The notes under the pieces are model-generated. The model ran no database searches. It was not told the DNA's origin and saw only the letters and a list, made by a program, of their open reading frames with translations. From positions 372,092-436,000 of the forward strand of contig NW_020847472.1 of assembly GCF_003704095.1 (NCBI RefSeq): a stretch of DNA of 63,909 nt. Reading direction: 5' to 3'. Numbering within the stretch: the first letter of the stretch is position 1; the number at the start of each line of letters is the position of its first letter. A program made the translations under genes and the position numbers. This stretch comes from Pocillopora damicornis (taxonomy: Eukaryota). Of the stretch, positions 1 through 3,303 are shown one piece after another.

Positions 1-1
1 G

Positions 2-1840
2 ACTAAACTTCAAACTCTTGATTTGTTCCACAATGAACTCACAAAGATTCCTAAAGAACTGTTGAATCTTAAGATGCTCTTGAGACTGGACTTGGATAAA
101 AATAAATTTAAACTGAAAGCATGGAAAGTCCCAAAGTTGACAAAGCAAGTTAAATATCCAGACAGAGATCCGAGCTTGAAAGAAGACTGGCGTGGAAAGG
201 TGAGGGAGGATTATATCGACACTGGTGAGGTAAAAACTATTGAGATACTTAATGATGTCAATGATACAAGTGAAGATGACTCTGATGAGGATGATGTTGA
301 TGGCCTAAGTTATAGTGAAGCAGCTTTAGAATATGCCATGAAAAGAAGTTTGTCAATTTGGAAGTCACATGAAGGTGGGTAATTTCAGAATTGGCTTTGG
401 ATCATGTTCAATTCTCAGATCTAGAGCTTATTTGTGCAAAGTCCTGATCACTTAACCTTTTCACTCCCAAGATCTCATCAGTAATTCTCCTTGCTGTCTG
501 CCATACAATCTTTACAAGGTTACTTTGGAGAATTTGGTATTTGATCTAGTAAATTTTGTGATAATCCCCTCAGTGATATTTTCTTATTATCATCCCTTGT
601 CTGCTTGATATTGTAAGGAGAAATTATGTCTTTGTCACTCATGAGAGTTAAAGGGTTAACAGAACTGAAGCAATGTTTTTAATTCTAAATCGTGGGGCAG
701 GTCTTAGCTCAAAAACCTTTCCATTTATTTTTGTTTCCTGATATCTGTATTGTTACCCTTAAATAACTTTTATTTTGCTCTTTTTGATTTGGAACATGGT
801 AAACAAAACAATTTTGTAGGACCAGTAACTTCAGGACTTTATAACCCTTTGACTGCAAAGATTGACTAGCATCTAATTTCTCCTTCCAATATAACCCCTG
901 AGTCAAACATTAAGGTCATGAGAATAAAGGAAATGATCAGCAACTAAAGAAGCTCTTGAATGTTCAACAAATTCTCCTTGTCAGCACCCTAGGAAATGTA
1001 TAGAGAGCAGTATGGAGAATATGCATGCTGATGTTAGGGTGTAAAGGATTATGGGAAATGAGCTTCTGATGTCACCTGTAGAGCCTCTATATTCCACACA
1101 TTCCTCTCCTGTATCCCTTCATCCTTCTTCTTTTGTCCAATCTGTCCCCCAGCCCCACCTCCCTCTTTACCTTTAAGGCATTTTATCCACTTATTCAATT
1201 ATTTAAATTAACCTTTTTTTTTCTCTTTGCAACAGGCCCAGATGAGAGAGAAGTTCATGATAGAGAACAAACTACAAGAGGTTTAATTCCCAAGTTTCCC
1301 TCAAAATACCAACCTCAGGAGACAGAGACCATTGTTGAACTTTCTAAAACCATTTATACTGAAATTTTCGAAGATGCCGATGATTTATCTGAGAATGAGT
1401 CCAATATGAGAAGTCTAGCTCAGTTGGAAGACCATACAGACACAAAAAATGCGAGCATCAACGATCTATCAAATGGAGCTCTCTTAGAAGGACCTCAGCA
1501 AGATGGACCTCAGTCAAGAGGGTCTCTGTCAGATGGGCCATTGCCAAGTGCACTGGACACAGTTGAGGACTGGGATAAGGAGATTGAAGATTCCTTGGCT
1601 TACAATCTTGTACTGGAAACGTTTAAGCAAAGGAGTTATAACAAAGTTAATTTTCAAAACCAACTGCAAAACTTGCTTTACTCCTATCCTCCTGCATCCC
1701 AAGCCTTCACCAAGACAGCAAACTATGAATCAGCTGTTTACTCATTCCCTGCACCACATCTGTGCAGTGATCAGGTGTCTTGCTCCTTAGATGCTGGGCA
1801 GTTTGATGATGCTGATGAGGAGGTGCTTGCTAAATTGTGA
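2..1840 (+). CDS. 3' part of a spliced leucine-rich-repeat protein with an acidic, COPRS-like C-terminal tail (exons <2..374 and 1236..1840)
   Basis: The frame is open from the window start and shows LRR consensus (LQTLDLFHNELTKIPKELLNLKMLLRLDLDKNKF). Donor GAAG|GTGGGT at 375 and polypyrimidine-CAG acceptor at 1235 are both phase 1 and join in frame (SHE-G-PDERE). The last exon carries EDWDKE and GQFDDAD. AATAAA lies at 2015-2020. Confidence 0.75.
452..659. mobile_element. Non-autonomous TTAA-flanked MITE (piggyBac-like ends), intronic
   Basis: Left end TTAACCTTTTCACTCCCAAGA and right end TCATGAGAGTTAAAGGGTTAA are imperfect terminal inverted repeats bounded by TTAA. Confidence 0.7.
841..1052 (+). 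mobile_element. ~210-bp MITE, dispersed family (further copies at 16984-17165 and 24960-25146)
   Basis: AACCCTTT...AAAGGATT ends. The internal sequence (gtcatgagaataaaggaaatgatca...aaattctccttgtcagcac...gtatggagaatatgcatgctgatg) recurs at 24960-25146 and in reverse at ~16984-17165. Confidence 0.7.
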
Positions 1841-2339
1841 GTCTTGTTTAAGATACATCTTGTTTGAAGTTTTAGCCAATATCATCAGTTATGCTCTGAA
1901 CCTCAGAGGTTTAGTATCACATTTGTTGTGTTACATTTGTAAATTTTAGATGGAATGAATTAGCTATTCCTTTTTTCTTGTCCTGTGTATTTTTTGTTGT
2001 ACAACTGTAAGGTAAATAAATCCCAGTTGATAGAGCAGAGTATTTCTACTAACTCATAGTTTTGTTTTTTACCGAACATTGTGGTTAAACTAGAGCAATC
2101 ATGTTAATGTATTTTTCATAACGGCAGTTTAGAGAGTTTAGTTGCGAGTCTGTCGTTGAAATAATGATTAAAAAGGTGCTCTCCCAATTATCCATGTTTT
2201 TTTTTTTTCATCTCCCTTACGAGACCCCACGCAAGGACCTAAAGAACCTCTTTTTGTCTCAGTAGAGTCAATCTCGTGCCTGTTGTACACAATTTTCGGA
2301 AGCGTGTATACACGCGCGCAAGTGAGGGAAACTAACCTA

Positions 2340-2504
2340 AATTGTTTTTAGCAGGTAATTTAGTGTTAACAACTGAGTTGAAAACGCAAATTGACTACCG
2401 TAAAGAGTTTAAACGCTGTCGTTTCGAGCGTTGGCTTTGTTACCTCCCCTCTGATTTACATTTTCAACAAAGTTGTTAACGCTAGATTACCAGCTATACT
2501 CTCT

Positions 2505-2547
<43 letters not shown>

Positions 2548-2552
2548 ATAAA
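2340..2552. repeat. Palindromic interspersed repeat (ctctcaccgacgcagcaccacagtttctttagaaac family)
   Basis: The same core recurs at ~6130-6195, 6590-6657, 8605-8660, 29018-29058 and 37790-37920. Internal inverted arms: agcaggtaatttagtgttaacaac / gttgttaacgctagattaccagct. Confidence 0.65.
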
Positions 2553-3303
2553 TTGTTTTTAAACAGGCATCGGAACACAATTTGTAGCAAAAGGAAGTAT
2601 CTTTTGTTTCTTTCTTTCTTGTCCATACACCAAGACTTTTAACAAGCAATTTAGGCTGCCTGTGATACACTGTGCATCCTGAATGCGCATTTTTTCACGC
2701 GAAATTTCAGTTTCGTACCCCCGTGGTCACGGGAAGGGGTGGTGTGACCTCTGAGAACGAGATGGACGTAATATGCGCTAGCGGCTTCAGCATCATAAAA
2801 TACCTATATTCTTGGAATACAGAAACACACTGACGAATTGTAGTTAGTCTCCATTATACGCGGACAGAGAGCTATTCACCCATTTTTGGGAACGGGGGGA
2901 ACTCATTTACTGTGGGGGGGTGGGAAATGCCCTTTAGTTTTTATTTGCGAATATAAAGCACCTTTCTAAAATGTGAAAATTTGAAATCCTGGTTGTCTGA
3001 GGTTTCTTAACTCAAAATTTACATACAAATAATTTTGCTCTCGCGTGCTATGATTTTCATTCCTTCATTTTTTTAACCACCTGGTCTTTTTGTTTGTTTT
3101 CTTTTTTCCTTTTGTTTTTGTGCCTTTTACTTTTTTGTATGGAAAGTTGATCGTGACTGACTCTTAAAATAGAAGTGACATGTGACGTCTCCTTTGAATT
3201 TTGGAAACTGTTTCCTTTTATAAATCAGGTGATAAATTTGGAAACAACGTTACTGTTGTAAAACAGTTGTCGGTTAACATTGCTTTCTTGCGTTTGTTTT
3301 TCC

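What the first reader, a model, noticed from the sequence alone, without database searches (positions are those of the whole stretch)
1236..1840. LRR protein ending in a COPRS-like PRMT5-binding motif
Seen: the last exon encodes an acidic low-complexity tail with VEDWDKEI (~1562-1585) and a near-terminal GQFDDADEE (1796-1822), and splices in frame to an LRR-coding exon. Established: GQF[D/E]DA[D/E] is the PRMT5-binding motif of the substrate adaptors pICln, RIOK1 and COPR5/COPRS, and COPRS also has an upstream EDWD segment with similar spacing. Vertebrate COPRS has no LRRs. Inference: an LRR-fused COPRS-like PRMT5 adaptor in an early-branching animal, possibly an ancestral architecture.
Basis: partly seen in the sequence, partly recalled or inferred. 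Interest (0 to 1): 0.75.

Follow-up and report, generated by a model that had tools for sequence, protein, structure and literature searches.

The report
LRR protein with PRMT5-binding tail
This coral gene joins a SHOC2-like leucine-rich-repeat domain to a floppy acidic tail ending in the short peptide that three known adaptor proteins use to dock onto the arginine methyltransferase PRMT5, and the same design is kept in molluscs, annelids and echinoderms, so it is probably an undescribed fourth adaptor family.

Summary
RNA contigs from 4 of 4 runs (4 studies) join 374|1236 in frame over a GT..AG intron.

The gene has two exons. One encodes about 19 LRRs and starts upstream of the window. The other encodes a 200-residue acidic, mostly disordered tail.

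The motif is not chance:
- The strict DNA pattern for GQF[D/E]DA[D/E] occurs twice in the 234-Mb genome. One site is this gene and the other is the N-terminus of RIOK1, a known PRMT5 adaptor.
- Of 39 family proteins from corals, anemone, octocoral, molluscs, annelid and echinoderms, 17 carry the strict motif within their last 40 residues and 14 a variant.
- Conservation per position (Q, F, D5 > G > A > positions 4, 7) follows the published alanine scan.

The best reading is a PRMT5 substrate adaptor with an LRR client-binding module. Binding was not tested.

Likeness to COPRS beyond the motif is weak. The window tail has no Pfam COPR5 match. Four echinoderm-type orthologs give colinear matches below threshold. 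No chordate ortholog and no synteny were found.

No such protein turned up in five full-text searches.

The parts
1..374 (+). 3' end of exon 1. It encodes the last LRR units (TKLQTLDLFHNELTKIPKELLNLKMLLRLDLDKNKF), the conserved K.PKLT..VKYP.RDP.LK.[DN]WRGK.R.D block, an acidic stretch and the conserved ALEYAMKRSLSIWKSHE block. The exon starts upstream of the window at the ATG G000:C4107:370677. A 100-N assembly gap inside it ends just before window base 1.
   Evidence: RNA contigs cover 1-372 in 4 of 4 runs.
375..1235 (+). Intron of 861 nt, GT..AG, phase 1. It carries repeat fragments that many unrelated RNA contigs match.
   Evidence: tables 2, 5 and 8.
1236..1840 (+). Exon 2 coding part: a 200-residue acidic tail followed by the TGA stop at 1838-1840.
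   Evidence: It is 98% identical to database fragment P0121.
1364..1381 (+). Internal IFEDAD, tail residues 43-48. It resembles the second half of the PRMT5-binding motif but lacks the G and Q. It recurs in cnidarian tails.
   Evidence: alignment columns 101-112.
1562..1585 (+). VEDWDKEI. E, W, D and E are the conserved core E[DN]WD.E of the whole family.
   Evidence: E659 and W661 (P0003 numbering) are invariant in 28 of 28, D662 is kept in 0.93 and E664 in 0.89.
1571..1684 (+). Predicted long helix, tail residues 112-149, starting at the conserved W. It is the only confidently modelled element of the tail.
   Evidence: pLDDT 80-86 over residues 111-150. The corresponding part of the ortholog model is also helical but at low confidence.
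1685..1732 (+). YPPASQAFTKTANYES block, residues 150-165. It is specific to cnidarian-type tails. Bilaterian tails instead have Y.HP ... F.P.D.H at this place.
   Evidence: Y150, P152, A156, A161, Y163 and S165 are invariant in 21 of 21. One search shows the bilaterian tails.
1796..1816 (+). GQFDDAD, an exact match to the PRMT5-binding motif GQF[D/E]DA[D/E]. It is followed by EEVLAKL and the stop.
1841..2342 (+). 3' UTR. Contigs contiguous with the coding part end at 2034 (X1), 2160 (X5) and 2326 (X6). In X10 a separate contig covers 1923-2342. AATAAA lies at 2015 and ATTAAA at 2167.
   Evidence: table 8.

Best explanation
The gene encodes a cytosolic-type protein with no signal peptide or membrane segment visible in the sequence. 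It has three parts.

(1) A SHOC2-like solenoid of about 19 leucine-rich repeats, which would hold one or more client proteins.

(2) A disordered, acidic linker of about 280 residues. It carries one conserved helix that begins at E[DN]WD.E.

(3) The PRMT5-binding motif GQFDDAD, seven residues from the C-terminus.

[quoted passage not shown] Whatever the LRR domain holds is thereby tethered flexibly near the methyltransferase and becomes symmetrically dimethylated on arginine.

Shown here: the gene structure and splicing; the motif, its rarity in this genome and its conservation across phyla; the disorder of the tail; and conservation of three groove residues in this coral's PRMT5.

Inferred: binding to PRMT5, the adaptor role rather than a substrate or regulator role, and the identity of the clients.

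The module from the EDWD helix to the motif may be homologous to the C-terminal half of vertebrate COPRS. I put that at about 0.4.
For: Gene structure. One transcript joins both exons in 4 of 4 RNA runs.

Motif definition. GQF[D/E]DA[D/E] is necessary and sufficient for PRMT5 binding and is unique to pICln, RIOK1 and COPR5 in the human proteome (passages of bioRxiv 10.1101/2020.08.22.256347). It lies near a terminus and outside domains (same passages).

Rarity. The strict motif occurs twice in the genome: in this gene and in the N-terminus of the RIOK1 homolog.

Conservation across 39 family proteins:
- 17 have the strict motif within the last 40 residues.
- 14 have a variant, and all 14 keep the Q and an F or Y after it.
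- 8 have none. Four of these are gene models cut at the intron, one has a different tail in its model, one is partial, one is a sponge, and one snail has GQFDS.

Conservation per position in 28 full-length orthologs: G 0.89, Q 0.96, F 0.96, position 4 0.68, D5 0.93, A 0.75, position 7 0.64. The rest of the tail averages 0.22.

This order matches the alanine scan of the RIOK1 peptide (PMC8252068 passages): Q and F >300 uM, D5 97, G 39, D4 6.4 and D7 6.2, against 6.0 for wild type.

The 21 cnidarian-type tails keep G, Q, F and D5 invariant.

Structure. The tail model is mostly low confidence, with mean pLDDT 60 and one helix at 112-149. In the full-length ortholog model the LRR part has pLDDT above 90 and everything after about residue 470 is below 50. 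This fits the 'flexible tethering module' picture of adaptors (PMC11847536 passages). The LRR fold is closest to SHOC2, a scaffold that assembles partners (TM by target up to 0.84).

PRMT5 groove. This coral's PRMT5 keeps N239, K240 and K241 of the groove. The next exon gives Y for F243 and R for K248 by offset, which is inferred.
Against: - No binding or methylation data exist, and nothing here tests PRMT5 binding directly.
- AlphaFold-Multimer was not available.
- Clients of the LRR domain are unknown.
- Several mollusc orthologs change important positions: F to Y in Haliotis, D5 to N with A to C in Ruditapes and Mya, and G to N in Gigantopelta.
- The sponge ortholog has EDWD but no motif.
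- No chordate ortholog of the LRR part appeared in two searches. Each scored only the 8000 candidates sharing most words.
- Short linear motifs can arise convergently and can be read by more than one partner.
Confidence: 0.6

Rival explanations
1. The motif is real and binds PRMT5, but the family acquired it independently of COPRS. 'COPRS-like' then means no more than sharing a short linear motif, as RIOK1 and pICln also do. This rival concerns ancestry only and is compatible with the adaptor reading.
For: - The window tail has no Pfam COPR5 match at E<=10, and the genome has none.
- 17 of 21 family tails scanned give nothing.
- The tail search of 1.84 billion representatives found 26 proteins, all of them tails of this family or fragments of them. 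No COPRS-like protein of another kind was among them.
- The bilaterian tail profile found nothing among proteins of 80-254 residues at E<=10.
- Homologs of the human neighbours of COPRS (RAB11FIP4, UTP6, SUZ12; table seen in PMC5370280) lie on three other contigs.
- COPR5 homologs are reported only in tetrapods, and no chordate LRR ortholog was seen.
Against: - Four echinoderm-type tails match the COPR5 model, and it is the only Pfam family that recurs. The matches are Lytechinus E 0.0013-0.0016, Amphiura 0.0025, Diadema 0.013 and P0026 0.48.
- The alignments are colinear and run from the EDWD segment or earlier to the model's end: model positions 79-149, 33-148, 52-149 and 79-149 of 150.
- Motif-bearing controls do not match: the coral RIOK1 N-terminus and the pICln C-terminus, 0 of 2.
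- The W-to-G spacing is tight in bilaterian members, 56-66 residues.
Confidence: 0.5
2. The protein binds PRMT5 through the motif but is not a substrate adaptor. It could be a substrate itself, a competitor that displaces RIOK1 or pICln, or an anchor that places PRMT5 at a cellular site.
For: - Adaptors compete for one groove (PMC11847536 abstract and passages).
- COPR5 is said to localise PRMT5 to the nucleus (same paper).
- Most family members keep a [DN]WRG[KR].R.D block just after the LRRs. It contains an RG dipeptide that could be a methylation site. This is my inference.
Against: A large, well conserved LRR solenoid (mean column identity 0.58) suggests a partner-binding surface, which a decoy would not need. 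The WRG block is missing in the echinoid members.
Confidence: 0.2
3. The C-terminal GQFDDAD does not bind PRMT5 in these animals. It is then a conserved acidic-aromatic motif read by another partner.
For: Binding was not tested. The variants in molluscs and the loss in the sponge show that the motif is not indispensable to the family.
Against: - The match to a 7-residue motif is exact, and the motif is otherwise found in this genome only in RIOK1.
- The conservation pattern mirrors the PRMT5-binding hot spots.
- Groove residues are conserved in the coral PRMT5.
Confidence: 0.12
4. Two separate genes: an LRR gene ending near 374 and a small tail gene starting in the intron. Some database models do this. 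P0121 starts in the intron, and P0001, P0005 and P0009 stop just after the LRR exon.
For: Such split models exist in the databases.
Against: Spliced contigs were found in 4 of 4 RNA runs. Joined full-length proteins are annotated in many species. In the split models the residues before GPDERE, or after SHEG, read like intron translation.
Confidence: 0.02

Closest known systems
COPR5/COPRS (cooperator of PRMT5; Pfam PF15340)
   Same: - The PRMT5-binding motif sits at the extreme C-terminus. Human COPR5 has GQFDDAE at residues 177-183 of 184.
- The region upstream is acidic.
- Echinoderm-type orthologs of the window's protein align below threshold to the last 70-115 positions of the COPR5 model, starting at their E[DN]WD segment.
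   Different: - COPRS is a small protein without LRRs that binds histone H4, and it is reported only in tetrapods.
- The window's tail does not match the COPR5 model.
- Between EDWD and the motif the tail carries a cnidarian-specific YPPA.QAF..TA.Y.S block.
- There is no shared synteny.
RIOK1 and pICln (CLNS1A), the other two motif-bearing PRMT5 substrate adaptors
   Same: The logic is the same: a folded client-binding domain plus a terminal GQF[D/E]DA[D/E] peptide in a flexible region. The coral's own RIOK1 carries DGQFEDAEED at its N-terminus.
   Different: The client-binding domains are unrelated: a RIO kinase domain and a PH-like fold, against an LRR solenoid here. The candidate last exon of the coral's pICln ends in EQFEDAEK, which is not a strict match (not verified).
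SHOC2 (LRR scaffold of the SHOC2-MRAS-PP1C complex)
   Same: It is the closest solved fold for the LRR part, with Foldseek E 1e-22, 27-30% identity and TM by target up to 0.84. Databases name many orthologs 'SHOC-2-like'.
   Different: - The family is not an ortholog of SHOC2.
- It has its own signature insertion, LGS.I.ELERR.FQNGNW, between repeats.
- It also has the SIW.SH block, the EDWD helix and the PRMT5-binding motif, none of which appear in the LRR-only SHOC2 chains matched.

Membership tests
PRMT5 substrate adaptors that use the PRMT5-binding motif (pICln, RIOK1, COPR5) | Presence of GQF[D/E]DA[D/E] | tested here: met
   GQFDDAD lies at 1796-1816.
PRMT5 substrate adaptors that use the PRMT5-binding motif (pICln, RIOK1, COPR5) | The motif lies near a terminus, outside folded domains, in a flexible region | tested here: met
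   Seven residues follow the motif before the stop. The motif region has low pLDDT.
PRMT5 substrate adaptors that use the PRMT5-binding motif (pICln, RIOK1, COPR5) | The motif is conserved among orthologs | tested here: met
   Of 39 family proteins, 17 have the strict motif and 14 a variant. Q and F are kept in 0.96 and D5 in 0.93 of 28 full-length orthologs.
PRMT5 substrate adaptors that use the PRMT5-binding motif (pICln, RIOK1, COPR5) | Physical binding to the groove of the PRMT5 TIM barrel | not testable with these tools
   Support is indirect only. N239, K240 and K241 are conserved in the coral PRMT5 exon. Positions 243 and 248 are Y and R by offset.
PRMT5 substrate adaptors that use the PRMT5-binding motif (pICln, RIOK1, COPR5) | Recruits a client whose methylation depends on the motif | not testable with these tools
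   The LRR solenoid is a plausible client-binding module. No client is known.
COPR5/COPRS family (Pfam PF15340) | Match to the Pfam COPR5 model above its gathering score of 27 bits | tested here: not met
   The window tail gives no match at E<=10 and the genome gives none. The best ortholog scores 19.9 bits.
COPR5/COPRS family (Pfam PF15340) | Small protein with a C-terminal PRMT5-binding region and no other domain | tested here: not met
   The C-terminal motif is present, but it is fused to about 19 LRRs. The total is about 745 residues if the duplicated gap flank is counted once.
COPR5/COPRS family (Pfam PF15340) | Binding to histone H4 | not testable with these tools
   The property is known for COPRS from Lacroix 2008, as cited in PMC5370280. 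The original paper is not held.
SHOC2 orthologs | Closest relatives are SHOC2 proteins of other animals, with the same end-to-end architecture | tested here: not met
   The top hits form their own family with a conserved tail. The likeness to SHOC2 is at the fold level with 27-30% identity.

The most novel reading that the evidence does not exclude
This LRR protein represents the ancestral animal form of COPRS. The ancestor of cnidarians and bilaterians, or an earlier one, had an LRR scaffold tethered to PRMT5 by an EDWD helix and a C-terminal binding motif. Vertebrates lost the LRR exon and kept the separately encoded tail exon as the small histone-binding protein COPRS. Most non-vertebrate animals would then have a fourth, unstudied route of PRMT5 substrate selection through LRR-bound clients.
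Probability: 0.3. Interest if true: 0.75.

Novelty: new member of a known kind. Interest (0 to 1): 0.62.

Why it matters
PRMT5 makes most symmetric dimethylarginine and is a drug target. Its substrate choice is thought to rest on three adaptors that share one docking peptide.

A fourth family would show that the adaptor repertoire is wider and older than the human proteome suggests. This family is conserved from cnidarians to echinoderms and carries a large protein-binding LRR domain.

It would give cnidarian, mollusc and sea-urchin biologists a concrete handle on PRMT5 targeting. It would also offer a testable origin for COPRS, which so far looks like a tetrapod orphan.

The gene also matters for annotation, because several public gene models split or truncate it at the single intron.

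Tried and rejected
1. Pfam COPR5 on the window tail gave no match, and on the whole genome none.

2. The tail against 1.84 billion representative proteins returned only tails of this family.

3. The profile of 12 bilaterian tails (A1) found nothing at E<=10 among the 5.8 billion proteins, with a length window of 80-254 residues. It also found nothing in the PDB chain sequences. The first blank may reflect the stringent E-value at that database size.

4. I could not obtain any COPRS sequence with the tools. No profile-profile test against COPRS was therefore possible, and the EDWD segment of COPRS rests on recall.

5. The ESM Atlas look-alike searches of two echinoderm tails gave no usable hit.

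6. Synteny with the human neighbours of COPRS was not found.

7. The PDB search with the second PRMT5 groove exon (32 residues) was blank. Positions 243 and 248 therefore rest on offset counting.

8. The earlier-findings look-up near the locus returned nothing on this gene.

9. I considered and rejected a two-gene model, because.

10. I considered that the Pfam COPR5 matches might be driven by the 7-residue motif alone. I rejected this as the sole cause. The RIOK1 and pICln controls give no match, and neither do 17 family tails, most of which carry a strict motif and the rest a variant.

11. Supplementary files of the papers were closed and were not requested. The supplements of the Mulvaney preprint may list motif matches in other species.

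12. Literature searches for an LRR protein with this motif found none. That is the basis for 'not in print'. It covers only the held library.
Full report
WHAT IS IN THE SEQUENCE

The window is G000:C4107:372092-436000. Frame 2-373 reads the end of a leucine-rich-repeat (LRR) region followed by an acidic stretch and ...KRSLSIWKSHE. A GT donor follows base 374.

After an AG at 1234-1235, the frame 1238-1840 reads 200 residues and a TGA. The base at 374 plus 1236-1237 makes a Gly codon, so the two parts join in frame.

The tail has 38 acidic and 15 basic residues in 200.

THE GENE

Upstream of the window the same open frame continues for 438 codons to an ATG at G000:C4107:370677. Exon 1 is therefore one large LRR exon.

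A run of 100 N lies inside exon 1 and ends immediately before window base 1. The 53 bases on its two sides are identical. Orthologs have this repeat unit once at that place. The gap therefore looks like an assembly artefact rather than missing sequence. I did not fill it or read it from RNA contigs.

I never joined the two exons for a search or a fold. Each was handled apart. The full-length views below come from database proteins of other species.

IS IT ONE TRANSCRIPT?

- The run search listed 22 runs. Sixteen are on record as RNA and hold 0.43-0.51 of the sampled words of window 1-1900. Four runs of unstated kind hold 0.88-0.90. This is what exons without the intron would give.
- I laid four RNA runs from four studies on window 1-2600. 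Each has one contig that skips 861 bases with GT..AG ends at 374|1236, with 116-255 letters on the shorter side (tables 5 and 8).
- These are assembled contigs, so they show that the joined form exists. They do not show its level or strand.
- Contigs joined to the coding part run on to 2034-2326, and in X10 a separate contig reaches 2342. This gives a 3' UTR of 200-500 bases.

RELATIVES

A search with exon 1 (596 residues, with X at the gap) gave a clear family ahead of the generic LRR background. The named members are:
- corals: Orbicella, Oculina, Porites
- a sea anemone: Actinia
- an octocoral: Dendronephthya
- molluscs: Haliotis, Liolophura, Ruditapes, Mya, Pinctada, Tegillarca, Batillaria, Littorina
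- echinoderms: Asterias, Acanthaster, Apostichopus, Lytechinus
- an annelid: Ridgeia
- a partial Limulus protein
- a sponge: Sycon

A second search with the Lytechinus protein added Diadema, Amphiura, Gigantopelta, Saccostrea, Potamilus and Bradybaena.

In both searches only the 8000 candidates sharing most words were scored. The best vertebrate hits were LRRC40 proteins without the tail. So no chordate ortholog was seen, which is not proof of absence.

I examined 39 proteins: ranks 1-31 and rank 40, plus seven new ones. I did not examine the remaining listed rows, which are mostly prokaryotic LRR proteins, apart from P0073 and P0116. Both are LRRC40-type proteins without the tail.

CONSERVATION OF THE MOTIF

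Of the 39 proteins, 17 have strict GQF[D/E]DA[D/E] within the last 40 residues. Fourteen have a variant:
- GQYDDAD, GQFDDCE, GQFENCD, SQFDNCD
- GQFEDAS, GQFADAD, GQFDDIS, GQFDDCD
- GQFSDAE, GQFCDDA, NQFDDAS, GQFDDDS
- two models that end inside the motif

Eight have none:
- Four (P0001, P0005, P0009, P0150) stop a few residues after the SIW.SH block, that is, at the intron.
- One (P0002) has a different tail in its model.
- One (P0031) is partial.
- One is the sponge.
- One snail has GQFDS.

In 28 aligned full-length proteins the tail outside the two motifs has a mean column identity of 0.22, against 0.58 for the LRRs. Within the motif the values are G 0.89, Q 0.96, F 0.96, position 4 0.68, D5 0.93, A 0.75 and position 7 0.64. 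The E and W of E[DN]WD.E are invariant.

In 21 cnidarian-type tails G, Q, F and D5 are invariant.

This ranking is the one found by alanine scanning of the RIOK1 peptide (passages of PMC8252068). There Q and F are essential, D5 is important, G is moderate, and positions 4 and 7 are dispensable.

RARITY IN THIS GENOME

The DNA pattern for the strict motif matches twice in 234 Mb on both strands, and the reversed control matches 0 times. One match is this gene. The other opens a reading frame MEFEFRSCTVQDGQFEDAEED... that continues into a RIO kinase-like sequence. That is the N-terminal motif of RIOK1, as in humans.

The pICln locus was found with Pfam Voldacs. A candidate last exon ends ...NDEQFEDAEK, a non-strict variant. 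I did not verify that exon.

THE TARGET

PRMT5 is present on contig C2282. One exon aligns to human PRMT5 residues 204-242 in the TIM-barrel structure 7boc and keeps ...LFLTNKKG. That is N239, K240 and K241, which the papers name as contacts of the peptide.

The next exon reads YPVLPR... By simple offset this gives F243Y and K248R, both conservative changes. This step is inferred, because the PDB search with that short exon was blank.

STRUCTURE

AlphaFold2 on the window's tail with 20 cnidarian tails gave a mean pLDDT of 60. The one confident element is a helix at residues 112-149, which begins at the conserved W. There is a weaker helix at 30-43, and the binding motif is unstructured.

The full-length Orbicella ortholog, modelled with 27 relatives, gave an LRR solenoid of 19 strands at residues 18-455 with pLDDT mostly above 90. 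Nearly everything after residue 470 was below 50. No docking of the tail on the solenoid was predicted.

Foldseek places the solenoid nearest to a Leptospira LRR protein and to SHOC2, with 27-34% identity.

HOW IT MOST LIKELY WORKS

The known adaptors are a client-binding domain plus the terminal peptide. They act as flexible tethers that raise methylation of clients carrying GRG tails, and they compete for one groove (abstract and passages of PMC11847536).

This protein has the same layout with an LRR domain as the client-binding part. I therefore read it as a PRMT5 substrate adaptor, with confidence 0.6.

The gene structure, motif, conservation, disorder and groove residues are shown. Binding, the adaptor role and the clients are inferred.

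The EDWD helix is the second conserved element of the tail. Its role is open. It could bind basic clients, contact PRMT5:MEP50, or fold back on the LRR.

IS IT COPRS-LIKE?

There is no Pfam COPR5 match on the tail or in the genome.

Among 21 family tails scanned, four match COPR5 below its 27-bit cut-off:
- Lytechinus: 19.6-19.9 bits, E 0.0013-0.0016, model positions 79-149 of 150
- Amphiura: 19.0 bits, E 0.0025, positions 33-148
- Diadema: 16.6 bits, E 0.013, positions 52-149
- P0026: 11.6 bits, E 0.48, positions 79-149, and only when the module alone was scanned

The other 17 gave nothing. They are Asterias, Acanthaster, Apostichopus, P0025, P0022, Ridgeia, four molluscs, the window and six cnidarian fragments.

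The matches are colinear and start at the E[DN]WD segment, and COPR5 is the only family that recurs. Two motif-bearing controls, the coral RIOK1 N-terminus and the pICln C-terminus, do not match. So the similarity is more than the 7-residue motif, but it is weak.

The tail search of 1.84 billion representatives found 26 proteins. All are tails of this family, and most are tail-only fragments 99-262 residues long. No protein of another kind was among them.

I could not obtain a COPRS sequence. No profile-profile test was possible, and the claim that COPRS has an EDWD segment at similar spacing remains recalled.

The W-to-G spacing is 56-66 residues in bilaterian members and 72-89 in cnidarian ones.

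Human COPRS lies between RAB11FIP4 and UTP6/SUZ12 (table seen in PMC5370280). The coral homologs of these three lie on other contigs.

I put homology of the module with COPRS at about 0.4.

NOVELTY

The papers I read state that the motif is unique to pICln, RIOK1 and COPR5 in the human proteome and that COPR5 is tetrapod-only.

Five full-text searches found no LRR protein with this motif. Public annotations call the family 'SHOC-2-like', 'LRRC1-like', 'LRRC40-like' or hypothetical.

I class it as a new member of a known kind: motif-bearing PRMT5 adaptors. Its interest lies in its breadth across phyla and in the possible link to COPRS.

Noticed in passing
G000:C4107:371939-372144 (window 1-53 and the stretch before the gap): A 100-N gap inside the LRR exon ends just before window base 1. 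It is flanked by two identical 53-base copies. Orthologs have that repeat unit once, so the gap looks like a spurious join of overlapping ends. It was not filled.
   Followed up: partly
window 436-1131 and 2350-2600: These stretches, in the intron and downstream of the 3' UTR, are matched by very many short RNA contigs with summed depths in the thousands to tens of thousands, and with many loose ends. They are most likely fragments of abundant transcribed repeats.
   Followed up: no
L007 (G000:C3168:118871-118890, - strand): This is the only other strict GQF[D/E]DA[D/E] site in the genome. It is the N-terminus of the RIOK1 homolog (MEFEFRSCTVQDGQFEDAEED...), which is followed by an acidic DGWDWEDE segment. 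The same frame has an N gap further on.
   Followed up: partly
L010:1965-2060 (G000:C1035, + strand): A candidate last exon of pICln ends ...NDEQFEDAEK*, so the G of the motif is replaced by E. The exon was not verified by RNA or homology.
   Followed up: partly
window 1364-1381: An internal IFEDAD resembles the second half of the PRMT5-binding motif without G and Q. Similar [IV]F[ED]DA[DSAT] recurs in most cnidarian tails that reach that far. It may be a degenerate duplicate or a second acidic-aromatic contact.
   Followed up: partly
P0040 (Sycon), P0014/P0015 (Ruditapes, Mya): The sponge ortholog keeps the LRRs, W.SH and EDWDLEI but has no C-terminal motif. The two heterodont bivalves have [GS]QF[ED]NCD followed by a shared 13-residue extension ending in N.[DN]PVF.
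   Followed up: no
P0001, P0005, P0009, P0150, P0121, P0123-P0125 (database models): Public gene models often break this gene at its single intron. LRR-only models read a few residues into the intron. Tail-only models start inside the intron before GPDERE.
   Followed up: partly
window 145-215 and orthologs: A conserved block K.PKLT..VKYP.RDP.LK[DN]WRG[KR].R.D lies just after the last LRR in cnidarians, molluscs, annelid and asteroids, but not in echinoids. It contains an RG dipeptide and its role is unknown.
   Followed up: no
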